A stretch of DNA of 64,000 bases from Paraphysomonas bandaiensis. Taxonomy: Eukaryota; Protista; Chrysophyceae. Shown in pieces: positions 1,389 through 64,000 of this stretch. The notes below the pieces were generated by a model that had not been told where the DNA came from, did no database searches, and saw nothing but the letters and a program-made list of their open reading frames with translations. The DNA lies in contig CBFFRP010000076.1 of NCBI GenBank assembly GCA_965644295.1, forward strand, positions 62,001 through 126,000, written 5' to 3'. The first letter of the stretch is position 1. Every line of letters begins with the position of its first letter. The position numbers were made by a program, and so were the translations under genes.

Positions 1389-2114
1389 ATGGAAGAAATT
1401 AAACAATTGGCTCAAGAAATCGATGAAGTGATCTGTAAATTTGAAGATGTTGGGGATAATGATTTGTCTGAGTCGGATGAGCACCGAGTGATCGCGCCCT
1501 CAGAGCGACGCCAATCAGCAGAACACTGCTTTGAGTTAGCTCTTGCGGAATCTGAAAAAGAAAGCCTACAAGATGATGTCGCAATGTTGTCCTCGAGAAA
1601 TGAGGAGCTGGAGGACTGTATCCTTCATCAGCGCTTTATCATTGACTTACTGAAAAATTTGAACGAGAAACTGTACAAGAAAGCTGGGACTGATGACGAG
1701 GCCTTAAACGAGGAAATCCGTCAATTGAACGACACCCTTCTCACGTATAACGATCGAAGTCTAGAGTTGCAGGAGAACTCTTCAGCCAATACCCTCCGAC
1801 ATTCCAAATATATACCGAGTCCTAGGAAGACAAAGAGCAATACGAAAATGGCTGTTGAGATGGGCGAGATGCAGCTAATGGTATCCCAATTAAAAGGGTC
1901 CCTTGCAGCTGCTCTTGCCCGACAGGAAGACCACCAGCGTATTCGTCGACTGCTTGAACAGGAGCTGAACGAGGAACGGCTGAAAAGACTTCACGCAGAG
2001 AAACAGCGTGACGCTTATGCCCTTGCCTACGAGGATTCACTTTTACATTTTAAGAAGATTGGACAGGAGAAGGCTACACAAATTAAGAAGGGGCGCGGGA
2101 ATGGCAAAGTATAG
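1389..2114 (+). CDS. Hypothetical coiled-coil protein, 241 aa
   Basis: Single-exon ORF, E/L/Q/K-rich heptad character, divergent from iadA-like gene. Confidence 0.75.
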   Translation: MEEIKQLAQEIDEVICKFEDVGDNDLSESDEHRVIAPSERRQSAEHCFELALAESEKESLQDDVAMLSSRNEELEDCILHQRFIIDLLKNLNEKLYKKAGTDDEALNEEIRQLNDTLLTYNDRSLELQENSSANTLRHSKYIPSPRKTKSNTKMAVEMGEMQLMVSQLKGSLAAALARQEDHQRIRRLLEQELNEERLKRLHAEKQRDAYALAYEDSLLHFKKIGQEKATQIKKGRGNGKV

Positions 2115-2922
2115 GGACTTGTCTATTGTATGTAATAGTAGATTATATTTTGATAAGCAACTTAAATACCGTGCGTCCTCAGTATTATACTTTTTATGGG
2201 ATCCCTGTACCCGTTTGCTCTTATTGGTTGTATTGTTTGTAATATCTTGAATTTAAGAATAGAAAAATTTCTTATTGGTATAAGTAAACAACACCACAGA
2301 TATTTAATCTTTGTTCTCGATGTAAAGGGGGTGGCATAAGAGTAGCACAAAGCACAAAGGAATTGCTCTCAGAAAGCAAAGAGTGGGAGCATGCCTATTC
2401 CCCGAACCACAAATTGTGAAACCATCCATTCCTAGGACCTCTATGCACTGTACAGAGACCAACACCATTAATATAAATGACATGCTCGACATCTTGGTCA
2501 CTGTTAAATGTAAACAACCATAAAAGAGAAAGTATTCGTTGAGGTTTGGGGAAAGACATTCTCCTGCCCTCTCTCTCCCTTCTTATATATGAGCAAACTA
2601 GGGTTTAAGAACAGGTTTATAGAATAAATTGAAAGCTCATAATGTAATTAGCACCCAATCGACGACAAAAGGAGTGATAAAATAGGATCTATCCCCTTCC
2701 TTTTCTATACTATTACGCTATCGCTGATCGCTTACTACAGCGCCTCAGTAAACAGGTCCTTTCACATCGTTATATGTGTACAACAAGTCGATAGTTGGCA
2801 ATATCCGAAATTATCAGTACAGAAGAAATAAGAGTATGATATATAACAGAAAAGAACTACATATATTGATTCATTGGACTGAACCAACCAACAATATGAA
2901 GTCAATCTTTGGTTCTATCACC

Positions 2923-3410
2923 CCCCTCAACAAAGTCGGACTCGCACCTATTTGTAGTAGTCTGGGGGATTAGTACCAGAGATATTTCAGCTGATAATTT
3001 TCTGCTCACTCATAGCAAAAAAATCTGTGGTACAAGAGACAATAATAAGTGTGACTTGTGTATAGACGTCTTTGGGCCTTGACGAATAAACAGGCATCTG
3101 GGACTGGACCCACCTCAAGGGCATCCGGGGTATTGGGCTGCTTGCTGCCAAAGTCAAGCCGGGAATGAGCCCACGCTAAGGACTCAAAAATCCTGATGTT
3201 AGGTATACCAACATTTTGCTTGCTCATTGCGTTTTCTTTGAGCGATATAGCGAAAGTGCTTGTACCTTGGTGCTTGCGGTGACGCACAAGAAAAGCTTCC
3301 GGAGCGTTAAATAGTAGGATACCATATTTAACTAGTTAGTTAAATTGCAATGCTAAACTTGTTCTGACATTTAAACGTCTATTGCTAATAGGTTTGAAAG
3401 TATCAACTTT
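2923..3410 (+). mobile_element. Dispersed modular repeat family A, diverged copy
   Basis: Starts CCCTCAACAAAGTCGGACTCGCACC and shares AGACGTCTTTGGGCCTTGACGAATAAACAGGCA and CCTTGGTGCTTGCGG modules with copies at 8.6, 9.5, 22.2, 41.9, 42.7, 57.0 and 60.0 kb. Confidence 0.85.
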
Positions 3411-4157
3411 GATATTTGGAAGAGTTTAAACCCAACTAACTACAGTAACTAAACTTAAATTCACTTAATAATATTCTAATCAACTTCTTCTATCATTAAT
3501 AGTTATTCGCTAAATTAATATTCTTACTACTTCCTTTACAGTCACGATCTTTTTTACAGTCAGAGTATTTCCGTTTTTCTAAACTCTTTCATAGCGTAGA
3601 ATTAAATTTCACATAATAGTGTTGATACCTATTGTATTCTTTAGTTTTGCTTCATTTTCTGATTCTTACACGCTTATTGCTAATAATAAGACATTCACTA
3701 CTGTATTCTTTAACTAACAGTCATAATTCTAATATCTTAGAATACAGCTTTTAATGCTAAAAAAGCAATACTCAAATCAGAATATAGTGCAGATACTGGT
3801 TTCATATTATCTTCTAGTTAATTCTATTGGTGCAGAATCAAGTTTTTTAGTAAATAGAGAGTGAGCAGTTAGTAGATAGGGGGACCCTGATGACCAGTAG
3901 AGACCACAAAGATAAGATTAGGATTGTGTGTAAAATTGTAGAATCTATGGACTCGGTGAACCAGGACATTACATTTCTAGTGTCGCATTCCCTGCTTCTG
4001 GTTTAATTGAAAATCAATCGGTAATCACCATGCCAATTCAATCAGAATTAGTGTTTCTATGGTCTGATTCATTCTTTACGTCTAAATAGTACAAGCACTG
4101 CACACCCATGAACAGGGACAAGAGAGTAACTACAGTAATGCCCACACACACATATAT

Positions 4158-5656
4158 TCAGCCCCAAATTTTCTTTTCGTCAACATGCGTCCCCTTGGCC
4201 TTCAATATCACTGAAACAAACGTTGACGAATCATCAGAGTGCCCAGTCGAAGGCCCGGATACCGTCGATGAGGATGCATTTTGGATAATTTCTGTGTATT
4301 TCTTGACGGCTTTCATTTTAGCGTTGTCCAAGAACTCTAAAAACTTAATCTGCGAAAATAATTAATCACACGCCACAACCGAAATAGAGTATATAAGAAT
4401 TAGAACGCAAACACCTACAATATCATACACACCTCTTCTGCGGTTAAATCCGGGTGCCATATATCAAATATTAATACCACTCGAGGACCGACAGAATGAG
4501 GATCCCCATCACCTACAGCACTCCTGCATGCACGATTTTGCGCTTCGTGTAAAAAGGAGTCGTCAAAAATAATACATTTTCCTGGTATCAACTCAGTAGT
4601 TTCGTCACCAACAGTGAGGGTACACAAGGGTTCTGATTCTCCTGGTTTCTTACTAGGAACAATCAGTGGTAAATGACATCGAAGCTTTTTATTAGTGGGG
4701 CCATGATGGGGCTGAACCTGTGTGTCTGGTCCTAGAGCAGAGAATAATGCATGGTGATGCTGCCTGGGCAGTCCGCTGTACATATTTAGCAAACGTAAGG
4801 CAAAAAATATTTCATAAACTAAGATTGCAACAAAAATGCTGTTAACCATAACCCTAACTATCATAACCAGACAATTTAAAAACATCATACAAACTCCTAT
4901 TCCTCACCTGATAATCTGGGAAGTAATCGGACAGCATTCCCTATTCTTTTCAAAGAAGTCATTCATACCGTGAAGATACAAATAGCACACGTTCCAATCA
5001 CCCTTGTCAGTAGCCAACTCGCCATGGGCATCAAAGGTTTTGTTGGCCCGACCAGAAACAGGAGCACGATAAGGCTAAAAGCAGAATCAAGTGAGCGACG
5101 GCCACGAGGTACCCCCCATATTATATATATATAAATCGAACCTGAAACAAGTTGCCTTTGTTCTTCATGTCTAGAAATTCTTGAAGAATATCTGGATAGG
5201 CATTCTCAAGTCTTTGGACCCAGTCGAAATCGGATGTCTTCCAGAATGGTATGCTTCGCAATCCTGGTATGATATCAGGGCAACCTGCCTGCAGTGGGTG
5301 GCATGTACGCAAACTGCAAGAGTTTAATCTGCGCAGCATAAACGATTAGAGACGCAGTAATTAACAGCATTTGACATACCGAGACAGCAGATATGAAACA
5401 ACTCTATCCATCCTCTCCGGACACTGAGCCAGCTTCACCTGAATATATATATATATTGAGATATAGGTCCAATGCTCATAGTTCATAGCTCATTCACCTG
5501 AAGGAACCCTATGGCTATCTTGCTACTGAAGGGAGATGCCCCCTCACTCCTGAAGAGGTCCTCCACGAGCTTGAGCACATGCTGCTTCTTCTTCTCACTA
5601 TCCGGATGATCTTCCACATATCTTACACCAAATGCTAAATATTCCCCCCATTTCAT
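4158..5656 (-). CDS. Aspartyl/asparaginyl beta-hydroxylase-domain Fe/2OG dioxygenase, multi-exon
   Basis: Exons give PGLRSIPFW, LENAYPDILQEF, GDWNVCYL, ALFSALGPDTQVQPHHGPTNKKLRCHLPL, IFDDSFLHEA, RVVLIFDIWHPDL; ATG 5656, stop TGA 4158. Confidence 0.9.
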
Positions 5657-6368
5657 GCTGCAATAGAGACAGTGACAGTAACCAGAGGCGACTATGCAAT
5701 GCACTCACTGTGTCTGTGTGCGGTGAGCTGACTGGATCAGGAGTTAAAATCCTGTTGAATATTTTAACTTTCACTTCTCAAAATCCTAATTCCCGTCCAC
5801 TGTCATCTATAAAAATAGACTTTTTATGGGAAATCTACAAGAGCGCTGTATCTGCTGTGCATGTCCTGTCTCGTAAAGATATACTACGTACTGTATATAC
5901 TGTATAAAAAGGCCCAAAAGTCTAAATATATTGCAAAGAAAACCCCTTGCCCAACTACGCAGTTTCTGATATTTGTAGAATTACTGCTCAAGAATTTCTA
6001 ACCTTCTGTTCCCAAAACCTTGAGATTATGTAGTACATACAGAGTATGTACAGCAGTGTATATACTGCTGTACGAAGGGGAACGTATTTCCAGAATCTAC
6101 AATGCAGAGTGTAGTTAGTGTAGCGTACTACTGTATTCTTAGTGTATTTTTATTATTCTGTAGCAGTGAATTATGTATGTAGCAGGCAGAGCATAGAAGG
6201 CAAGTGTGTGTATGTTATACAGCAGTGTCTGTGCATATATATACTGAGCACTTAATAGCGACAGTAACAATAGCAGTGACAGGAGTCGCTATTAATTGTA
6301 TTGTTAGAGTATTAATCAACCGCAGTGTGTAGACATACATATCTGTGTCTGTGACTGTGATCGATTCA

Positions 6369-15837: not shown

Positions 15838-18800
15838 ATGTCTGAGTTAGAGGAATTACATAAGCAAATCAGTGCTAAGGGCGACGAGATCCGCTCTCTT
15901 AAGGCTAATAAGGTCTCCAAGCAGGATCTCGATCCTCACATCAAGGAATTAATAGGGCTCAAAGAGAGGTGAGTGTGTGTGATCAGCACATGTGTAGTAA
16001 TCCGACCAATAGATATCGCGATCTCAATGGCGGCGTAGAGTATGCACCGCCTTCAGCTGCTCCTCAGCGCAGCCCTCAGTTGATTGAGTTGGAAGGACTC
16101 ATCGCTGCTAAGGGGGATGAAATTCGCCAATTGAAAGCGAACAAGGCCGAAAAAGATGTGATAAACACTCATGTGCAGGACCTACTTGCCCTGAAAGAGC
16201 GCTACAAAGAGGCAAATGGCGGAGTGGCTTATGCTACTGAGGCTAAACCTGAGCCGAGCAAGAAGAAGAAAGCAGCAGCAGAGCCTGCTCAAGCTCCTGC
16301 CCGTGAGGGCCCAAGTAAGAAGGAACTTAACAAAATGAAAAGGAAAGAAAAACGCAAGGGTGGTGGGGAGAAGGCTGATGGTGACGCAGGAACTGCGCCT
16401 GGGAAGGCACTCACTGGTGAGCAACGTAGTGCAGGGAAAGCACAGCCCCCACAGATCACCTACCATTCCAAAGCAGAGCCAGCAGTCTCTCGTTTGGTAA
16501 TGGCGTTGACAGGCCAAGTTATCTCATGCGTGGCATCTTCGCCTGAAAGTCCTGCGCATCAGCCGTATTTGCTCACCGCATCGGGATCTCTATCAGGTGA
16601 CCTAGCCGTGGCACGATACCTCTGCCGCTCCTCTCTCCCTGCGCTGCTTCTGACTAACCCGTTGGAAGCCAGCCAGGTTGACCAGTGGTTAGACCATTGT
16701 ACCGCCGTTTCTTCTTCCGGGGTTGGGTTAGAGAGTACATTTGCTCTTTTAGAAGGTCACCTTGCAGACAAGACTTACCTCGTGGGTGAAACCCTTTCCC
16801 TCGCTGATATCGCTGTGTACGTTCTCGTGTCGGGCTCGCCAGCCCCTACCTCCTATCCTCGCAGCGCTCGGTGGCTTTCTCTGGTTTCATCTCTGCTTCC
16901 GCAGGTAACTGCTCTCCCTTCTGCCAAAGGTGGGAAGTCATCGGGTAAATCCAAAGGAAAAGGCGAAAAGCAAAGTGGTGGTAAGAACTCGGAGTCAGAG
17001 GACACATGTCCCCATCTGGAAGGTGCTGTGGAGGGTCAAGTTTGTACACGGTTTCCCCCGGAGCCCTCTGGATATCTGCATATTGGTGGGTGACGTTTGT
17101 GTATCTTACTTTGATTGATATTTGCTTTGCAGGACACACGAAAGCAGCCCTTTTAAATCAGTATTACGCTCAGCGATACAAAGGGAAACTTATAGTACGC
17201 TTCGACGACACCAATCCGTCAAAAGAAAAGGAAGAGTATGTTGATAATATCATTCGTGATCTTGCTACCTTAAATATCAAAGGTGATGTGGTAAGTATTT
17301 TGTACAAGGAGTGTCTGTAATTTCCATTGCTTGTATGTGGGACTGGCCTAGTTATGCTCAAATGCTAAAGTACAGTCTGTTTATGAATGTCAATGAGGAC
17401 TTTTGAGTAGGGACATCAGATATCCTGTAAAGGAATGACGATTTACCTGTAATTAGTAGAAGACTGAGACATCCATCCATTATGGCTGTATGATACCTGG
17501 ATAATGCGATGTCGTATGTATGGTCATCTCTGTATTGCAATCAATGTTTTTGTCTATATGTGGATGTCAATGAGGACTTTTGAGTAGGGACATCAGATAT
17601 CCTGTAAAGGAATGACGATTTACCTGTAATTAGTAGAAGACTGAGACATCCATCCATTATGGCTGTATGATACCTGGATAATGCGATGTCGTATGTATGG
17701 TCATCTCTGTATTGCAATCAATGTTTTTGTCTATATGTGGATGTCAATGAGGACTTTTGAGTAGGGACATCAGATATCCTGTAAAGGAATGACGATTTAC
17801 CTGTAATTAGTAGAAGACTGAGACATCCATTCATTATGGCTGTATGATACCTGGATAATGCGATGTCGTATGTATGGTCATCTCTGTATTGCAATCAATG
17901 TTTTTGTCTATATGTGGATGTCAATGAGGACTTTTGAGTAGGGACATCAGATATCCTGTAAAGGAATGACGATTTACCTGTAATTAGTAGAAGACTGAGA
18001 CATCCATCCATTATGGCTGTATGATACCTGGATAATGCGATGTCGTATGTATGGTCATCTCTGTATTGCAATCAATGTTTTTGTCTATATGTGGATGTCA
18101 ATGAGGACTTTTGAGTAGGGACATCAGATATCCTGTAAAGGAATGACGATTTACCTGTAATTAGTAGACGACTGAGACATCCATCCATTATGGCTGTATG
18201 ATACCTGGATAATGCGATGTCGTATGTATGGTCATCTCTGTATTGCAATCAATGTTTTTGTCTATATGTGGATGTCAATGAGGACTTTTGAGTAGGGACA
18301 TCAGATATCCTGTAAAGGAATGACGATTTACCTGTAATTAGTAGAAGACTGAGACATCCATCCATTATGGCTGTATGATACCTGGATAATGCGATGTCGT
18401 ATGTATGGTCATCTCTGTATTGCAATCAATGTTTTTGTCTATATGTGGATGTCAATGAGGACTTTTGAGTAGGGACATCAGATATCCTGTAAAGGAATGA
18501 CGATTTACCTGTAATTAGTAGAAGACTGAGACATCCATCCATTATGGCTGTATGATACCTGGATAATGCGATGTCGTATGTATGGTCATCTCTGTATTGC
18601 AATCAATGTTTTTGTCTATATGTGGATGTCAATGAGGACTTTTGAGTAGGGACATCAGATATCCTGTAAAGGAATGACGATTTACCTGTAATTAGTAGAC
18701 GACTGAGACATCCATCCATTATGGCTGTATGATACCTGGATAATGCGATGTCGTATGTATGGTCATCTCTGTATTGCAATCAATGTTTTTGTCTATATGT

Positions 18801-21103
18801 GGATGTCAATGAGGACTTTTGAGTAGGGACATCAGATATCCTGTAAAGGAATGACGATTTACCTGTAATTAGTAGAAGACTGAGACATCCATCCATTATG
18901 GCTGTATGATACCTGGATAATGCGATGTCGTATGTATGGTCATCTCTGTATTGCAATCAATGTTTTTGTCTATATGTGGATGTCAATGAGGACTTTTGAG
19001 TAGGGACATCAGATATCCTGTAAAGGAATGACGATTTACCTGTAATTAGTAGAAGACTGAGACATCCATCCATTATGGCTGTATGATACCTGGATAATGC
19101 GATGTCGTATGTATGGTCATCTCTGTATTGCAATCAATGTTTTTGTCTATATGTGGATGTCAATGAGGACTTTTGAGTAGGGACATCAGATATCCTGTAA
19201 AGGAATGACGATTTACCTGTAATTAGTAGAAGACTGAGACATCCATTCATCATCTGTATAATGCAATGCTTTGTGTATGAAGTTTTCAGCTGTACTTTTC
19301 TGATAGCGTTAATTTTGAGTTTTTTAGTAATGTTGATATTTTTGTTTCAGGTGACCCACACTTCTGATCACTTTGACACATGTCAAAAGGTAGTGTATAG
19401 GATTATGTACTTTTTTATAAACTCATTCGTGGTTAATTGAGCAGTACGCCCGCCAGATGATTAAGAAGGGATTAGCGTACATGGATGACACAGAACAGGA
19501 TAAGATGCAAGCCGAGCGTCTTGCCCGGGTGGAGTCGTACCGCAGAAACACTTCTCCTGAAGAGAATTTAGAGGTAGGTGTCTCGTGTTTGGACCATGGG
19601 TGATGTCCACTAACTCAGAATGTGCTGTCACAGCTTTTTGAGAAGCTCTTGAGAGGAGATCCTGATACCATTAAGTTTTGTCTGCGAGCCAAAATTGATA
19701 TGACCAGCGTGAATGGTACTATGCGTGATCCTGTGCTGTATAGATACAACCCCACTCCGCATAACCGTACTGGCACAAAGTACAAAGCTTATCCTACTTA
19801 CGACTTCGCATGTCCGATCGTCGACTCCATTGAGGGTGTGACACATGCTCTGCGAACAACCGAATACAATGATAGAGACGAACAGTACCACTGGCTGCAG
19901 GAGGCTATGGGTCTAAGGCGTGTGCACATCTTGGCGTACGGGAAAATCAACTTTGTTCACACTGTGTTGTCAAAGAGGAAGCTTAATTGGTTTGTCGAGA
20001 ATGGCAAGGTTGATGGCTGGAACGACCCCCGCTTCCCAACTATACAGGGTTGTGTGAGACGAGGAATGCAGGTGGACTCCCTCAAAAACTTTATTATTTC
20101 TCAAGGTGCATCACGGCGAGTGATTAACATGGAGTGGGACAAGTTTTGGAGTGAGAATAAGCGCGTATTGGAAGATATTTCCCCACGTTATATGGCCGTC
20201 ACCCGGGATACGAAGGTTCCTTTCTTAGTCACTAATGTCCCTGGGGAAGTTGTTGGTGTTTCAATTCAGCGCCACCCACAAAAGCCTGAGATGGGAATGA
20301 GGGTTAGTGTTCAACTGTTAAATCTTTGAACCTCAACTCCGGTATTTGATAGGTGTCAAGGCGCTACAATAAACTTTATCTGGAAGTGGAGGACTGTCAG
20401 AATTTCTCGGAAGGGGAGGAAGTTACACTTGTCCGATGGGGTAACTTTTTCATTGACAAAATGGAGAGGAATTCCAATGGAGAAGTAGTGTCGATGGAGG
20501 TATGACCTTTTTGTGGTTTGGAGTACATAATTTCGTACTGTAAGCGCACTCCTAGTGTATATCATGATATATGCATATTTTTTCATGGATAATGACCATG
20601 CTGCATTTATATTAACAATATCATGACTTTCTTATAAGGGACGTTTCAACCCTGATGCTACCAATTTCTCGAAGACAAAGAAGGCCACCTGGATTGCAGC
20701 AATTGTATGATTCTTGCTCCGTTACATTCATTCCCTAATTTGAATTTGCAGCCTGAATTGGTTCCGTGTCAGCTAGTTGAATTCGACCATCTTATTACGA
20801 AACCGAAATTGGGCGACGATGATGACTTCAAAGATTATGTCACTCCAGTTAGTCGGGCTGAGGTTTGTCTCAAATTTTAAATGTTTACTTTCTAAACAAG
20901 TATATATGCAGACGATTGCACTCGCTGATCCCTATTTGCGCACTGTCCAGACTGGTGAAGTGATTCAACTTGAACGCAAAGGTTTCTTCAGATGTGATAA
21001 AGCCTATGGTGGAAGCCCGGATAAGCCTGCAGTACTGTTCCTCATTCCAGATGGTAGGGTGAAGGCCATGTCAACTCTCAAGTCTGCTTTGAGTCACAGA
21101 TAA
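15838..21103 (+). CDS. Cytosolic glutamyl-tRNA synthetase with two N-terminal WHEP domains and a GST-like domain
   Basis: [15 protein letters not shown] (HIGH, split by an intron), [55 protein letters not shown]; KGDEIR-LKA WHEP repeats; QVDQWLD and [12 protein letters not shown] motifs. Confidence 0.96.
17384..19246 (+). ncRNA. Tandem array of 11 box C/D snoRNAs (SNORD74/snR64-like) in GluRS intron 17291-19350
   Basis: Each unit: stem TGGATGTC, C box ATGAGGA, guide GAGTAGGGACAT, D' CAGA, C' ATGACGA, D box CTGA, stem GACATCCA; 75 nt C to D. C boxes at 17393 + 177n up to 19163. Guide is complementary to conserved LSU rRNA UGUCCCUAY. Confidence 0.88.
17387..19246. repeat. 177-bp tandem repeat, about 10.5 near-identical units
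   Basis: Period measured directly (17393, 17570, 17747 ... 19163); only three variant positions seen (units 3, 5, 8). Confidence 0.98.
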
Positions 21104-38804: not shown

Positions 38805-39188
38805 TATGTATGTATGTATGTATGTATGTATGTATGTATGTATGTATGTATGTATGTATGTATGTATGTATGTATGTATGTATGTATGTATGTATGTATG
38901 TATGTATGTATGTATGTATGTATGTATGTATGTATGTATGTATGTATGTATGTATGTATGTATGTATGTATGTATGTATGTATGTATGTATGTATGTATG
39001 TATGTATGTATGTATGTATGTATGTATGTATGTATGTATGTATGTATGTATGTATGTATGTATGTATGTATGTATTAATGTATGTATGTATGTATGTATG
39101 TATGTATGTATGTATGTATGTATGTATGTATGTATGTATGTATGTATGTATGTATGTATGTATGTATGTATGTATGTATGTATGTATG
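38805..39188. repeat. (TATG)n microsatellite, about 380 bp
   Basis: Direct; one interruption near 39075. Confidence 0.99.
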
Positions 39189-39282
39189 GATGGATCTTGT
39201 CTATGTTTTGATGGTGTTGTGGTTATGGAATGCATCAGTGGTTTGTATATACATGTCCTTATATATCTAGTGGAATCATCGC

Positions 39283-58413: not shown

Positions 58414-58708
58414 GAATAGAAGTAAGTGCTACCAAGTGTGAATAGAAGTAAGTGTTACTAAGTGTCGAATGTTAGTTAATGTAAGAGTTGATAGTGTTAC
58501 TAAGTGTGAATAGAAGTAAGTGTTACTAAGTGTCGAATGTTAGTTAATGTAAGAGTTGATAGTGTTACTAAGTGTGAATAGAAGTAAGTGTTACTAAGTG
58601 TGAATAGAAGTAAGTGTTACTAAGGAAGAAATAGAACGGACTAAGAAATTACTATATATATAATTGATAGTATTACTAAGTGTGAATAGAAATAAGTGTT
58701 ACTAAGTC
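58414..58708. repeat. GTGTGAATAGAAGTAAGTGTTACTAA minisatellite (second copy 61428-61722)
   Basis: 26-bp units interleaved with a longer variant. Confidence 0.9.
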
Positions 58709-59654: not shown

Positions 59655-59754
59655 GATACAAACAGTCACTAAAGATGCAATTGGAAAGAGTTTAAGTTTA
59701 ATCTAGATGATCGATCACCATGGTACCTACATACCTATACACACATACATACAT

Positions 59755-59982
59755 ACATACATACATACATACATACATACATACATACATACATACATAC
59801 ATACATACATACATACATACATACATACATACATACATACATACATACATACATACATACATACATACATACATAAATACATACATACATACATACATAC
59901 ATACATACATACATACATACATACATACATACATACATACATACATACATACATACATACATACATACATACATACATACAT
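59755..59982. repeat. (CATA)n microsatellite, about 230 bp
   Basis: Direct. Confidence 0.99.
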
Positions 59983-61930
59983 AATAATGTGAACTCATAC
60001 TCAGCATCAATCACTCAAAGCAAACGCAGGGAGCAAAGAATGTTGATATACCTGACATCTGCTGACTTCAGGTTTTTTGAGTTCTTAAGAGGTGAACATC
60101 CCGGATGCTTAACTTCAGCAGGCAGCCCAATACCCCGGTTACCCTTCTGGTGGGCCCTGTCCCGGATGCCCTTGAGGTGGGCCCATTCCCGGATGCCTGT
60201 TAATTCGTCAGGGCCCAAAGACGTCTACACATGTGACACTTATTAGTGTCCCTTGTACCACACAAGCATTTGGCTATGAGTGGGCAGAACAATATATCTG
60301 CTGACTATATAATATGCGGCTCACGTAAGTTTCCCGGAGAAATATCTCCGGTACTTATCCCCCAGAACACCACGAAAAGGTGCGAGTCCGACTTTGTTGA
60401 GGGTAATTGCAATTAATTGTTACGTAGCCCTGTTTTCTATTTCAAGGACTCCGTCAATAGTGAGCTTCTCCCTCACATACAAGAACGGAAGTGGTCGCAC
60501 CTTGATGCCTACTATGTAACGCACAAGCAGCTTCCGCAGCGTTACATTTGCATCAGTTAGTTACAGGCAGAAGTCGATCTAGCTTGACTAGTTTTCATCT
60601 ATCTACTTACCTGGTGATGATTCTTGACGCCTACTGCTGATAATTAGATTTTCATATATATATTAAATATTAAATAGCAGTAGAGTTACAATCAGGGCCT
60701 GGTAAAAACCGTTAATGGTAATGGCTTAAAGGCCATTAATGGTAATGCCATTATAATTGCCGGGACATTTTTCATTAATGCCATTATAATTGCCGGGATC
60801 AGCACCATCGTTAATGAACCATTAATGGCATCCCAGTATTCCAGTAATGATATGCAATGTAGGATTTGGACAACCAGATTCAGAGTGTTTCAGCTATCTA
60901 ATAATCACCTTAGATCGACAATTTCCTTTCCATGTCAAGCACATCATCCAAATATCACGAAAATTGCTTGTAAAATAAAATATAAATTGTATGTCTATAT
61001 ATAATTGATAGCAGGGCCTGGTAACCATTAATGGTAATGCCATTATAATTGCCGGGACAATTTTAATTAATGGCATTACAATTGCCGGTAACAGGACTAC
61101 CATTAATGGTATCCCATTAATGACCTGTACTGCTATATAGAACTAAGTGTTATTACGATAATATAGAATATAGTATCTCCTCTATACTCCGAAGAAACTC
61201 TAAACAATATTAGACAACAATGTTCATGCAACTCTACAGGCACTCTGTGGCAACCTTGTTTACTATCTTCTTAAGGCATTCTAGAGTTAGAGAATAGTGT
61301 CCTGAGCAATATCCATAGCAACGTACCCATATACCCAAAAACTCTAAAATAATCATTGAAAATATGCATATATTTTACCTAAAAACATTCATAAAAACAC
61401 TATTTTCCCCCAACGTTGAAGGAAGATGAATAGAAGTAAGTGCTACCAAGTGTGAATAGAAGTAAGTGTTACTAAGTGTCGAATGTTAGTTAATGTAAGA
61501 GTTGATAGTGTTACTAAGTGTGAATAGAAGTAAGTGTTACTAAGTGTCGAATGTTAGTTAATGTAAGAGTTGATAGTGTTACTAAGTGTGAATAGAAGTA
61601 AGTGTTACTAAGTGTGAATAGAAGTAAGTGTTACTAAGGAAGAAATAGAACGGACTAAGAAATTACTATATATATAATTGATAGTATTACTAAGTGTGAA
61701 TAGAAATAAGTGTTACTAAGTCGGATTGCAATTATCGTGCAAGGCTGTCGGAAAGAAATATGAAGTCATGTGAACTAGGTAAAGAATTATTACATAGAAT
61801 ATGCTATTACTACAATGTTCCGAGTCCGTATACACTTAGTCAAATTCATATCTCAATACGTCCGGTTATGGAGACCAGTAATGTGTACATAAAATAGTTG
61901 TAGCTATTATTAATACGTTAACATAGCTCA

Positions 61931-62668: not shown

Positions 62669-62757
62669 GATACAAACAGTCACTAAAGATGCAATTGGAA
62701 AGAGTTTAAGTTTAATCTAGATGATCGATCACCATGGTACCTACATACCTATACACA

Positions 62758-63781
62758 CATACATACATACATACATACATACATACATACATACATACAT
62801 ACATACATACATACATACATACATACATACATACATACATACATACATACATACATACATACATACATACATACATACATACATACATACATACATACAT
62901 ACATACATACATACATACATACATACATACATACATACATACATACATACATACATACATACATACATACATACATACATACATACATACATACATACAT
63001 ACATACATACATACATACATACATACATACATACATACATACATACATACATACATACATACATACATACATACATACATACATACATACATACATACAT
63101 ACATACATACATACATACATACATACATACATACATACATACATACATACATACATACATACATACATACATACATACATACATACATACATACATACAT
63201 ACATACATACATACATACATACATACATACATACATACATACATACATACATACATACATACATACATACATACATACATACATACATACATACATACAT
63301 ACATACATACATACATACATACATACATACATACATACATACATACATACATACATACACATACATACATACATACATACATACATACATACATACATAC
63401 ATACATACATACATACATACATACATACATACATACATACATACATACATACATACATACATACATACATACATACATACATACATACATACATACATAC
63501 ATACATACATACATACATACATACATACATACATACATACATACATACATACATACATACATACATACATACATACATACATACATACATACATACATAC
63601 ATACATACATACATACATACATACATACATACATACATACATACATACATACATACATACATACATACATACATACATACATACATACATGCATACATAC
63701 ATACATACATACATACATACATACCTACATACCTACATACATACATACATACCTACATACCTACATACCTACATACATACA

Positions 63782-63815
<34 letters not shown>

Positions 63816-64000
63816 CATACATACATACATACATACATACATACATACATACATACATACATACATACATACATACATACATACATACATACATACATAC
63901 ATACATACATACATACATACATACATACATACATACATACATACATACATACATACATACATACATACATACATACATACATACATACATACATACATAC
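62758..64000. repeat. (CATA)n microsatellite, over 1.2 kb, runs off the window
   Basis: Direct; a few CCTA/CACA/TATA variants. Confidence 0.99.

What the first reader, a model, noticed from the sequence alone, without database searches (positions are those of the whole stretch)
17384..19246. Intronic 'satellite' is an 11-copy polycistronic box C/D snoRNA array
Seen: within one 2060-nt intron (typical introns here are about 50 nt), every 177-bp unit has on the sense strand an 8-bp terminal stem TGGATGTC/GACATCCA, C box ATGAGGA, D' CAGA, C' ATGACGA and D box CTGA. The array starts at the first stem and ends after the last D box, so all 11 cassettes are complete. Known: GTAGGGACAT before D' matches, from memory, the human SNORD74 and yeast snR64 guide, and the D'+5 rule points to the first C of LSU UGUCCCUA (yeast Cm2337). 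Translation genes commonly host snoRNAs, usually one per intron. Inference: recent tandem amplification of one rRNA methylation guide, raising its dose up to 11-fold per GluRS transcript.
Basis: partly seen in the sequence, partly recalled or inferred. Interest (0 to 1): 0.9.

Follow-up and report, generated by a model that had tools for sequence, protein, structure and literature searches.

The report
Eleven-copy snoRNA array in one intron
One intron of a glutamyl-tRNA synthetase gene in a marine, probably diatom, genome holds 11 near-identical tandem copies of a conserved small RNA that guides methylation of one cytosine in large-subunit rRNA, whereas six related organisms carry a single copy in the same intron, so a guide-RNA gene was caught being amplified in place.

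Summary
A 177-bp repeat, 99-100% identical, gives 11 complete 92-nt box C/D cassettes and 10 spacers of 85 nt. They lie on the sense strand of a 2060-nt GT..AG intron (17290-19349) of a GluRS-type gene. RNA contigs show this intron spliced out; neighbouring introns are 47-60 nt.

The D' guide pairs with this genome's own LSU rRNA (UGUCCCUAU; 8 Watson-Crick pairs plus 1 G·U). The +5 rule selects the first C, the snR64/SNORD74/R44 site.

New here: six other taxa, whose GluRS exon is 70-86% identical, carry one copy of the same snoRNA in the orthologous intron. TAGGGACA is invariant, the +5 register is the same, and the terminal stem covaries. The array is therefore a derived in-place amplification.

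The region before the D box is not an orphan guide. In all seven taxa it is complementary to the rRNA just 3' of the target, like the published 'extra base-pairing' of yeast snR64.

Unit contigs are about 12-16 times deeper than flank contigs in two DNA runs, which argues against assembly inflation.

A discrete ~92-nt RNA, the methylation itself and any dosage effect remain untested. First-stage notes report other tandem snoRNA arrays on other DNA of this genome; I verified one, 57 U14 copies.

Verdict: a new variant of a known kind.

The parts
17290..19349 (+). Host intron, 2060 nt, GTAAGT...TTTCAG, in a GluRS-type gene
   Evidence: RNA contigs of X8 and X14 join 17289 to 19350. Flanking exons encode ...[31 protein letters not shown] | VTHTSDHF....
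17384..19245 (+). The array: 11 cassettes of 92 nt and 10 spacers of 85 nt, period 177
   Evidence: Unit contigs are 12-16 times deeper than flank contigs in DNA runs X2 and X4.
17384..17475 (+). Cassette 1; its 5' stem carries G3A (TGAATGTC), leaving an A·C mismatch
17561..17652 (+). Cassette 2, the reference copy; identical to cassettes 4, 6, 7, 9 and 10
   Evidence: The predicted fold closes the 8-bp terminal stem.
17738..17829 (+). Cassette 3; the snoRNA is identical, and the first spacer base but one after it is C94T
17915..18006 (+). Cassette 4
18092..18183 (+). Cassette 5; A78C at position 3 upstream of the D box, outside the pairing element
18269..18360 (+). Cassette 6
18446..18537 (+). 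Cassette 7
18623..18714 (+). Cassette 8; A78C as in cassette 5, three units away, which suggests a 3-unit block duplication or gene conversion
18800..18891 (+). Cassette 9
18977..19068 (+). Cassette 10
19154..19245 (+). Cassette 11, complete; the flank after it resembles the first half of the spacer with deletions
17561..17568 (+). 5' arm of the terminal stem (UGGAUGUC), shown for copy 2
   Evidence: the four pairs next to the boxes are paired in 7 of 7 taxa, with 2-3 Watson-Crick pair types each.
17570..17576 (+). C box AUGAGGA (consensus RUGAUGA; position 5 is G)
   Evidence: The same variant is present in homologues L057, L059 and L053.
17584..17592 (+). D' guide GUAGGGACA, positions 10-2 upstream of D'
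   Evidence: It pairs with own LSU UGUCCCUAU by 8 Watson-Crick pairs plus 1 G·U; position 5 lies opposite the first C. TAGGGACA is invariant in 7 taxa.
17594..17597 (+). D' box CAGA
   Evidence: Homologues have CUGA, CAGA or CUUA at the same spacing.
17600..17611 (+). Internal hairpin UCCU-GUAA-AGGA, which brings D' and C' together
   Evidence: Read from the sequence. L057 and L059 have CUCCGAAAGGA(A) and CACUCCGGAAGGAGUG at the same place.
17612..17618 (+). C' box AUGACGA
17631..17637 (+). Accessory pairing element UAGUAGA, positions 10-4 upstream of the D box
   Evidence: Complementary to LSU UCUACUA, at +5..+11 from the target C. A homologous element of 7-12 nt is present in all 7 taxa.
17641..17644 (+). 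D box CUGA
17645..17652 (+). 3' arm of the terminal stem (GACAUCCA)
17653..17737 (+). Spacer, 85 nt, present 10 times: T-rich, without any AG dinucleotide and without a stable hairpin
   Evidence: AG-free in 120 of 20000 mononucleotide shuffles. Folding z-score +1.0.

Best explanation
The 177-bp 'satellite' is an in-place tandem amplification of an ancestral single-copy intronic box C/D snoRNA gene. That gene is the lineage's counterpart of yeast snR64, human SNORD74 and plant R44/J54.

Shown from sequence: each 92-nt cassette has the parts needed for a box C/D snoRNP. An 8-bp terminal stem is followed by a 3-nt bulge (A-A-U). The GA of the C box (AUGAGGA) can form tandem sheared G·A pairs with the GA of the D box (CUGA). 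An internal D'/C' pair (CAGA/AUGACGA) is held together by a 4-bp hairpin.

Shown from sequence and the +5 rule: the guide upstream of D' (GUAGGGACA) pairs with LSU rRNA UGUCCCUAU. This places fibrillarin on the first C, equivalent to yeast C2337. A second element upstream of the D box (UAGUAGA) pairs with UCUACUA immediately 3' of the target. It acts as accessory 'extra base-pairing' that stabilises a rather short guide duplex, not as a second methylation guide.

Shown: the array is transcribed by Pol II as part of the GluRS pre-mRNA and removed as one 2060-nt intron.

Inferred: the eleven snoRNPs assemble on the intron. They are separated by endonucleolytic cuts in the single-stranded, T-rich, AG-free spacers and trimmed by exonucleases to the protein-protected ends, as for plant and algal polycistronic intronic clusters. 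Each host transcript then yields several guides instead of one. The copies stay near-identical through unequal crossing-over or gene conversion.
For: Structure of the array. There are 11 complete cassettes at 99-100% identity. This is the only locus with this unit in the assembly. No paralogue with a canonical C box and the same guide exists elsewhere.

Host intron. RNA contigs of two runs show it spliced as one piece.

Target. The own LSU rDNA carries ...CCCACTGTCCCTATCTACTATC.... In my scan of the available 18S, 5.8S and partial 25S sequence, the UGUCCCUAU site gives 8 Watson-Crick pairs plus 1 G·U spanning positions 2-10, with the first C opposite position 5. It is the D' hit with the most Watson-Crick pairs; the only longer D' hit is an 11-bp run with just 5 Watson-Crick pairs.

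Family resemblance. All 11 units align end to end with Rfam snoR44_J54 (clan CL00069), with boxes and guide in register. A fungal Afu_335 / Me28S-Cm2645-like snoRNA found with a pattern search (L049) has the same guide and the same second element. snR64 is linked to 25S C2337 (PMC2806949).

Comparative evidence. Six other taxa (L053, L054, L055/L056, L057, L059, L060) have a GluRS exon 70-86% identical. Each carries one copy in the orthologous intron. TAGGGACA plus 1 nt plus D' is invariant. The terminal-stem pairs 1-4 are all paired, with 2-3 Watson-Crick pair types each.

Accessory pairing. The D-side region of all seven taxa is complementary (7-12 nt Watson-Crick) to rRNA at +3..+15 from the target. 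Shuffles reaching the observed length were 406, 11, 384, 7, 31, 34 and 0 of 5000. The register relative to the D box varies. snR64 is listed among yeast snoRNAs with conserved extra base-pairing that overlaps the guide target (PMC3116282).

Copy number. Unit contigs have depth 377-411 against flanks of 31 in X4, and 1096-1391 against 81-91 in X2.

Genome context. A second array of 57 U14 copies with a 255-bp period exists in the same genome.
Against: No discrete ~92-nt RNA has been seen. The runs available are contigs only. The 207-nt unit contigs in RNA runs X8 and X14 include the spacer. They could come from pre-mRNA, the excised intron or contaminating DNA.

The Rfam score is 22 bits against a gathering score of 48.

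The guide duplex is short: 8 Watson-Crick pairs plus 1 G·U, with a mismatch at position 11.

The C and C' boxes deviate from consensus at position 5, and D' is CAGA.

The spacer has no predicted hairpin (z +1.0) and no AG, so a yeast Rnt1-type AGNN stem-loop signal is absent. The processing nuclease is therefore unknown.

The LSU rDNA of the assembly is incomplete: about 2.2 kb of the 25S were available. Other targets of the D-side region cannot be excluded.

The rRNA of the six other taxa was not available; this genome's rRNA served as a proxy.
Confidence: 0.82

Rival explanations
1. The array is transcribed and spliced out, but the cassettes are not separated. Exonucleases trim the debranched intron only to the outermost snoRNPs. 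The main product is then a ~1.9-kb RNA capped by snoRNPs at both ends and studded with internal ones, like animal sno-lncRNAs. In that case at most a few mature guides are made per transcript.
For: In animals, two snoRNAs in one intron give sno-lncRNAs (review PMC11028025). The spacer has no hairpin and no AGNN signal for an RNase III-type cut. RNA-run contigs of the unit include the spacer.
Against: Plants and green algae process several snoRNAs from one intron (PMC7671301, introduction). The same genome keeps 57 tandem U14 copies, which is hard to explain if only end copies mature. Per-copy depth of the unit in the RNA runs is low and fits precursor levels.
Confidence: 0.1
2. The amplification is a selectively neutral satellite-like expansion, by unequal crossing-over or replication slippage, of a snoRNA-bearing intron segment. 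One or a few copies supply the function and the rest add nothing useful, so dose does not matter.
For: Six related taxa manage with one copy. The copies are near-identical, as in young satellites. One DNA run, X2, hints at a 67-bp difference at the 3' edge of the array.
Against: All 11 cassettes are intact. The only substitutions inside cassettes (copy 1 stem; copies 5 and 8 at position 3 upstream of D) spare the boxes, the guide and the accessory element. Unit-to-flank depth ratios are similar (about 12-16) in two DNA runs filed under two organism labels. First-stage notes report many other snoRNA arrays in this genome, one of which I verified. A pattern restricted to snoRNAs suggests selection for dose.
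Confidence: 0.15
3. The region upstream of the D box is a second true methylation guide. It would direct 2'-O-methylation of the nucleotide 6 nt downstream of the first target (C of UAUCUAC).
For: In L057 the duplex is 9 bp (snoRNA positions 2-10 upstream of D), in L054 9 bp (positions 4-12) and in L055 12 bp (positions 2-13). All three include position 5.
Against: In this genome the duplex is only 7 bp. The nucleotide opposite position 5 differs among taxa (+4, +5, +6, +7), and in L053 and L060 the duplex does not reach position 5. From my own knowledge, no methylation is known at this site in yeast. snR64 is described as having extra base-pairing, not a second guide (PMC3116282).
Confidence: 0.12
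4. The copy number is an assembly artefact: a single copy or a few copies inflated by the assembler.
For: No read spanning the whole intron was available. Short-read contigs collapse the array into one 207-nt circular unit.
Against: Unit contigs are 12-16 times deeper than unique flanks in two DNA runs from different samples. The assembled copies carry distinct variants in a fixed order.
Confidence: 0.03

Closest known systems
Yeast snR64, human SNORD74 (U74), plant snoR44/J54/Z268, Drosophila Me28S-Cm2645, Aspergillus Afu_335 (Rfam clan CL00069 and kin)
   Same: The guide core is the same (…AGGGACA + 1 nt + D'). It targets the first C of LSU UGUCCCUA, equivalent to yeast C2337. Box order C-D'-C'-D and the internal hairpin match. 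Accessory complementarity to the rRNA next to the target is present, as published for snR64.
   Different: The sequence is too diverged for the Rfam gathering score (22 against 48 bits). The C box is AUGAGGA and D' is CAGA. Plant R44 uses its D guide for a second methylation 11 nt upstream, whereas here the D side pairs downstream of the target. Those genes are single genes or members of mixed clusters, not an 11-copy homogeneous array.
Intronic polycistronic snoRNA clusters of rice and Chlamydomonas (Liang et al. 2002; Chen et al. 2008, cited in PMC7671301)
   Same: Several snoRNAs lie in the sense strand of one spliceosomal intron of a protein-coding gene. Isoforms arise by local duplication.
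   Different: From my own knowledge of those papers, which were not held in the library, the clusters are mostly mixtures of different snoRNAs or a few diverged isoforms. Here one snoRNA is repeated 11 times at 99-100% identity with a fixed 85-nt spacer, in a stramenopile with ~50-nt introns.
Tandemly repeated snoRNA gene clusters of Euglena gracilis and trypanosomatids
   Same: Canonical rRNA-modification guides are amplified as head-to-tail repeats and presumably expressed polycistronically to raise dose.
   Different: From my own knowledge, those repeats are not inside a spliceosomal intron of a protein-coding gene, and their units usually hold several different snoRNAs.
Mammalian SNORD115/116 and SNORD113/114 tandem arrays
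   Same: Large homogeneous tandem arrays of box C/D snoRNA genes that evolve by unequal recombination and gene conversion (PMC11028025).
   Different: Each mammalian copy sits in its own intron of a repeated non-coding exon-intron unit, and the snoRNAs are orphans. Here all copies share one intron of a coding gene (a single splice joint) and guide a universally conserved rRNA site.

Membership tests
Box C/D snoRNA | C box (RUGAUGA) near the 5' end and D box (CUGA) near the 3' end | tested here: met
   AUGAGGA lies at unit nt 10-16 and CUGA at nt 81-84 in all 11 copies. The GA dinucleotides needed for the sheared pairs are intact. Position 5 is G instead of U, as in homologues L057, L059 and L053.
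Box C/D snoRNA | Terminal stem next to the boxes with K-turn geometry | tested here: met
   An 8-bp stem is followed by a 3-nt bulge and then GA. Pairs 1-4 next to the boxes are kept in 7 of 7 taxa through compensatory changes.
Box C/D snoRNA | Guide of about 9 bp or more to a target RNA, with the modified nucleotide opposite position 5 upstream of D or D' | tested here: met
   8 Watson-Crick pairs plus 1 G·U over positions 2-10 with the own LSU rRNA; position 5 lies opposite the first C of UGUCCCUA. This is at the short end of the usual range.
Box C/D snoRNA | Accumulates as a discrete 60-120-nt RNA bound by fibrillarin, Nop56, Nop58 and Snu13 | tested here: inconclusive
   Only contigs of RNA runs were available. 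The unit is present in X8 and X14 but with the spacer included, and its origin (precursor, intron or DNA) cannot be told.
SNORD74 / snR64 / snoR44_J54 (Rfam CL00069) | Guide for the LSU C equivalent to yeast C2337 | tested here: met
   The link between snR64 and C2337 is from PMC2806949. That C2337 is the first C of UGUCCCUA rests on my own knowledge of yeast numbering.
SNORD74 / snR64 / snoR44_J54 (Rfam CL00069) | Score at or above the Rfam gathering threshold | tested here: not met
   21.9-22.4 bits against 48 for RF00357, with E about 1 in a 5-kb search. No hit at gathering level in the window. A plant control contig scored 98 and 85 bits.
SNORD74 / snR64 / snoR44_J54 (Rfam CL00069) | Conserved extra base-pairing next to, and overlapping, the guide target (described for snR64) | tested here: met
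   The 7-nt UAGUAGA pairs with rRNA at +5..+11 and overlaps the guide duplex by 1 nt. A homologous element of 7-12 nt is present in all 7 taxa (PMC3116282).
Intronic polycistronic snoRNA cluster (plant / green-algal type) | Two or more snoRNAs in the sense strand of one spliceosomal intron of an expressed host gene | tested here: met
   Eleven cassettes lie on the + strand inside intron 17290-19349, which is spliced as a single unit in RNA contigs.
Intronic polycistronic snoRNA cluster (plant / green-algal type) | Individual snoRNAs released by endonucleolytic cuts in the spacers | not testable with these tools
   No raw small-RNA reads were available. The spacer shows no hairpin.
Mammalian-type tandem snoRNA array (SNORD115/116) | One snoRNA per intron of a repeated exon-intron unit | tested here: not met
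   The RNA contigs show only one splice joint across the array. The spacers hold no AG, so they cannot end an intron.

The most novel reading that the evidence does not exclude
In this marine, probably diatom, lineage, canonical rRNA-modification snoRNAs have been converted genome-wide from single intronic genes into homogeneous tandem arrays of about 10 to nearly 60 copies. Many of these would sit inside single introns of protein-coding genes. That would imply a lineage-specific switch from 'one snoRNA per intron' exonucleolytic maturation to an endonuclease-based polycistronic pathway acting on unstructured, AG-free spacers. It would also imply a new way of setting snoRNA dose in a genome whose normal introns are ~50 nt.
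Probability: 0.35. Interest if true: 0.75.

Novelty: new variant of a known kind. Interest (0 to 1): 0.6.

Why it matters
snoRNA gene organisation is a textbook case of evolutionary flexibility, but as of 2020 it had been described among unicellular algae only for Chlamydomonas, Euglena and Ostreococcus (PMC7671301).

This locus offers a clean before-and-after pair. Six taxa have one intronic copy. This genome has eleven copies in the orthologous intron.

That makes three questions testable:
- How are several snoRNAs released from one intron when the spacer has no RNase III-type hairpin?
- Does snoRNA dose scale with gene copy number?
- How can a 2-kb repeat-filled intron be spliced correctly in a genome built for 50-nt introns?

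It also extends the 'extra base-pairing' of snR64-type guides from fungi to stramenopiles. Finally, it warns annotators that 'satellites' in such genomes can be functional RNA gene arrays.

Tried and rejected
Rfam at gathering level gave nothing in the window. At E-value level only sub-threshold snoR44_J54 hits appeared. The mir-297 hits elsewhere in the window are (TATG)n microsatellites.

Spacer hairpin or second RNA. The spacer folds no better than shuffles (z +1.0). By eye it has no D box and no ACA box, so there is no evidence for a processing hairpin or a second snoRNA.

D-side region as a methylation guide. Rejected as the main reading, because the register is not conserved among the seven taxa.

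Metagenome pattern scan for C box + guide + D' + C'. It found only a plant R44 cluster (three contigs), one fungal Afu_335-type snoRNA and four hits that look like chance (high GC, no snoRNA context), with no close relative. The relatives came from the protein route instead.

Own rRNA. The genome search with RF02543 failed twice. The rDNA of the assembly is fragmentary. I used the full 18S, the 5.8S and about 2.2 kb of 25S pieces. Contig C545, taken at first as pure LSU, carries an ankyrin-like repeat gene next to the LSU piece.

Organism. Thalassiosira rotula/gravida was considered because of the two species labels. It was rejected because that genome is 672 Mb (PMC11842555). The assignment 'probably a diatom' rests on at least 7 silicon-transporter loci and on marine plankton runs.

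First-stage note of a U61 array. An RF00270 search of the own genome found nothing, but the control also rang nowhere, so this says nothing.

The 67-nt 'deletion' at the 3' edge of the array in run X2 rests on a 29-nt contig end, below the tool's 31-nt rule. I count it only as a hint.

The 58-aa minus-strand ORFs in every unit are a mechanical by-product of a 177-bp (59-codon) period.

The Chlamydomonas paper (PMC2390600) is not held.

Full report
**1. What is there**

Tandem Repeats Finder reports one array at 17387-19250: period 177, 10.5 copies, 99% matches, no indels. Phased from 17384, the region holds 11 complete 92-nt cassettes and 10 spacers of 85 nt.

Each cassette reads as follows:
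- 5' stem UGGAUGUC, then one A
- C box AUGAGGA
- 17 nt ending in GUAGGGACAU
- D' box CAGA
- a small hairpin UCCU-GUAA-AGGA
- C' box AUGACGA
- 22 nt
- D box CUGA
- 3' stem GACAUCCA

The predicted fold closes the 8-bp terminal stem. The stem, a 3-nt bulge (A-A-U) and the GA of the C box facing the GA of the D box give the geometry of a kink-turn. That geometry statement is established knowledge of box C/D motifs.

Six cassettes are identical. The variants are:
- Copy 1 has G3A in the 5' stem.
- Copies 5 and 8 share A78C at position 3 upstream of D.
- Copies 3 and 11 share C94T just outside the 3' stem.

None of these touches a box, the guide or the second pairing element. The unit occurs nowhere else in the 62.6-Mb assembly. 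No gene with a canonical C box and the same guide exists elsewhere.

**2. Host gene and intron**

The flanking ORFs carry two WHEP-TRS domains, a GST_C domain, and the class Ic catalytic and anticodon-binding domains. They score best against archaeal/eukaryotic GluRS, with gltX_arch at 224 bits and glnS at 194.

Contigs of two RNA runs join 17289 to 19350, skipping 2060 nt with GT..AG ends. Run X8 is shown to be RNA by its spliced 2.8-kb contig; run X14 is a random-primed marine metatranscriptome. The three neighbouring introns are 47, 55 and 60 nt.

So the array lies in the sense strand of a single, correctly spliced intron about 40 times the usual length. No other joint inside the array was reported. 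The spacers contain no AG at all. The mammalian arrangement of one snoRNA per small intron therefore does not apply.

**3. Is the copy number real?**

Only assembled contigs of public runs were available. The tool warns that depth is not a copy number.

Per-contig depths are nevertheless consistent:
- In DNA run X4 the unit contigs have depth 377-411 against 31 for the unique flanks.
- In X2 the figures are 1096-1391 against 81-91.

That gives ratios of about 12-16. The two runs come from different samples filed under two organism labels. The assembled copies also carry ordered private variants. An assembly expansion is unlikely.

**4. Target**

The rDNA of the assembly is fragmentary. I recovered the full 18S, the 5.8S and about 2.2 kb of 25S pieces. 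The 25S piece on contig C545 reads ...GAGAUUCCCACUGUCCCUAUCUACUAUCUAGCG....

I scanned both guide regions against all available rRNA, requiring pairing at position 5. For the D' guide, the UGUCCCUAU site gives 8 Watson-Crick pairs plus 1 G·U over positions 2-10. The first C lies opposite position 5. It is the hit with the most Watson-Crick pairs; the only longer hit is an 11-bp run with just 5 of them.

This is the site assigned to snR64 in yeast (C2337; PMC2806949). The numbering of the first C rests on my own knowledge.

All 11 units align end to end with Rfam snoR44_J54 (clan CL00069), with C, guide, D', C' and D in register. The score is only 22 bits against a gathering score of 48. Formal Rfam membership is therefore not met.

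**5. Relatives: one copy in the same intron**

I searched with the 235-aa exon downstream of the array and fetched the genomic contigs of hits that were 70-86% identical. Six taxa gave loci:
- L053, an NCBI assembly
- L054 and L059, two organisms from one Logan run
- L055/L056, from JGI metagenomes
- L057 and L060, from Logan runs

Locus GC ranges from 0.27 to 0.55.

In every one, the intron at the same codon position holds exactly one snoRNA of the same kind. That position is after ...[10 protein letters not shown]...K.D. and before V(S/T)H(S/T)SD.F.

TAGGGACA is invariant. One nucleotide separates it from D' (CUGA, CAGA or CUUA), so the same C is selected in all. The two closest taxa, L057 and L059, share the unusual C box AUGAGGA with this genome, as does L053. 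L057 and L059 also share the GAGUAGGGACA guide and most of the D-side sequence.

The terminal stems differ in sequence but stay paired. The four pairs next to the boxes are paired in 7 of 7 taxa, with two or three Watson-Crick pair types each, for example U-A, G-C and A-U at pair 2.

This is the strongest evidence that the cassette is a real, selected RNA gene. It also shows that the 11-copy state is derived: the ancestral single gene was amplified where it stood. The spacer fits this. The flank after copy 11 and the flank before copy 1 resemble the two halves of the spacer, as expected from unequal exchange.

**6. The second half of the snoRNA**

In this genome UAGUAGA (positions 10-4 upstream of D) is complementary to UCUACUA at +5..+11 from the target C. 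It overlaps the guide duplex by one nucleotide.

Only two 7-mer matches of this region exist in the 4.1 kb of rRNA scanned. Both lie within 50 nt of the target. Taken alone, this match is weak: 406 of 5000 shuffles reach it.

The same region of all six relatives, however, is complementary to the same rRNA stretch (+3..+15). The longest Watson-Crick runs and shuffle counts, out of 5000, are:

| Locus | Longest run (nt) | Shuffles reaching it |
|---|---|---|
| L057 | 9 | 11 |
| L059 | 7 | 384 |
| L060 | 10 | 7 |
| L053 | 8 | 31 |
| L054 | 9 | 34 |
| L055 | 12 | 0 |

The fungal Afu_335-type snoRNA found by pattern search (L049) has GUAGUAGAU as well.

The nucleotide opposite position 5 is not conserved (+4 to +7). 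In two taxa the duplex does not reach position 5. This fits the 'extra base-pairing' described for yeast. snR64 is named there among snoRNAs with conserved complementarity next to, and overlapping, the methylation target, and such pairing raised methylation up to five-fold (PMC3116282).

I read the element as an accessory anchor that compensates for a short guide. In L055, L054 and L057 it could also serve as a second guide.

**7. Expression**

The intron is transcribed and removed. A 207-nt circular unit contig, 177 nt plus a 30-nt overlap, is present in both RNA runs. In X8 its depth is 18 against 983 for the mRNA. In the random-primed X14 its depth is 9.3 against 5.7-9.

The higher relative level in the random-primed library is what a non-polyadenylated stable RNA would give. 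But the contig includes the spacer. Per-copy depth is below 1-2, and DNA carry-over cannot be excluded. No raw reads were on offer, so a discrete 92-nt RNA is not shown.

The X14 unit carries one spacer difference (17556 A>G) as its only form. This hints that a change can spread through all copies.

**8. Processing: inference**

With exonucleases alone, an intron holding several snoRNPs would give a snoRNA-capped long RNA, as in animals (PMC11028025). Plants and green algae release several snoRNAs from one intron (PMC7671301).

The spacer here is T-rich and folds no better than shuffles (z +1.0). It lacks AG entirely, which 120 of 20000 shuffles also do. The U14 array spacer is likewise AG-poor, with 2 AG against about 9 expected.

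A yeast Rnt1-type AGNN stem-loop is thus absent. I favour cuts by a single-strand endonuclease followed by trimming, but this step is the least secure. AG avoidance on the sense strand only may serve to keep cryptic 3' splice sites out of a very long intron. That is speculation.

**9. Context and novelty**

The organism is coded. At least seven silicon-transporter loci and its presence in marine plankton metatranscriptomes make a diatom likely.

First-stage notes list many other tandem snoRNA arrays on other DNA of this genome. I verified one: 57 U14-like copies with a 255-bp period on contig C434. They have canonical boxes and lie downstream of a KH-domain gene on the same strand.

I found no paper describing snoRNA gene organisation or tandem snoRNA arrays in diatoms.

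Tandem snoRNA repeats are known in Euglena, trypanosomatids and mammals. Intronic clusters are known in plants and Chlamydomonas. A homogeneous 11-copy array of a universal rRNA guide inside one intron of a coding gene, with its single-copy ancestor visible in relatives, is a new variant of these known kinds rather than a new kind.

Noticed in passing
G000 contig C434:87990-102345 (loci L040, L042, L051, L052): 57 tandem U14-like snoRNA copies with a 255-bp period on the minus strand. They have a canonical C box, a D box and the 18S-complementary element, with E about 5e-8 but below the Rfam gathering score. The array starts about 500 nt downstream of the stop codon of a KH-domain gene on the same strand. 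Its spacer is GT-rich and AG-poor (2 AG against about 9 expected).
   Followed up: partly
window 17653-17737 and the nine other spacers: The 85-nt spacer has no AG dinucleotide on the sense strand, although GA and CT are present; 120 of 20000 shuffles are also AG-free. It has no stable hairpin. It shares the motif GTATGTATG with the U14 spacer and with the (TATG)n microsatellites common in this window.
   Followed up: partly
window 19220-19288: In DNA run X2 the contig coming from the 3' flank joins 19288 to 19220. This would delete 67 nt, including the D box and 3' stem of the last cassette. It rests on a 29-nt contig end only. Run X4 has the reference form.
   Followed up: no
L023 = G000 C188:1-6000: A partial rDNA unit (LSU 5' end, 5.8S, truncated 18S) is followed by a 322-bp x 11 tandem array (2041-5582, 99% identical). 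Just beyond it lies a SNORD24 hit above the Rfam gathering score (5610-5685, minus strand, 53 bits against 41).
   Followed up: no
L019 = G000 C545:1-6000, about 1475-1810: The LSU rDNA fragment on this contig abuts a sequence that matches at least 296 places in the genome at 77-81% identity. Read on the other strand, it encodes 29-aa ankyrin-like repeats (…LDVLKWLRSQDPPCPWDEETC…). This is a large gene family, not a satellite. The junction with rDNA may be a dispersed rDNA fragment or a misjoin.
   Followed up: partly
G000 contigs C420, C525, C438, C528, C296: Several divergent or fragmentary rDNA pieces exist. The 5.8S copies score 132, 116 and 63 bits against 147 for the main type. A roughly 200-nt LSU fragment lies inside a 410-kb contig. 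No contig holds a complete 25S gene.
   Followed up: no
window 38805-39192, 59724-59983, 62738-64000: Long (TATG)n/(TACA)n microsatellites, up to 316 units at the window end. They give spurious sub-threshold Rfam mir-297 hits.
   Followed up: yes
window 58425-58605 and 61439-61619: Two identical 68-bp x 2.7 tandem repeats lie about 3 kb apart. They may be the two ends of a repeated element.
   Followed up: no
L057:1500-1640 (Logan SRR30952580, locus GC 0.27): The single-copy homologue in this very AT-rich relative is flanked by a further external stem (AAUGGUAAU...AUUACCAUU) beyond the 9-bp terminal stem. Such stems are known to aid intronic snoRNA processing. The array units of the window have no such extension.
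   Followed up: no
L044 (metagenome contig Ga0041060_1003185): A plant-type polycistronic cluster, snoZ267 - snoR44_J54 - snoR44_J54 - snoR122, all above gathering score. It served as a positive control for the Rfam models.
   Followed up: yes
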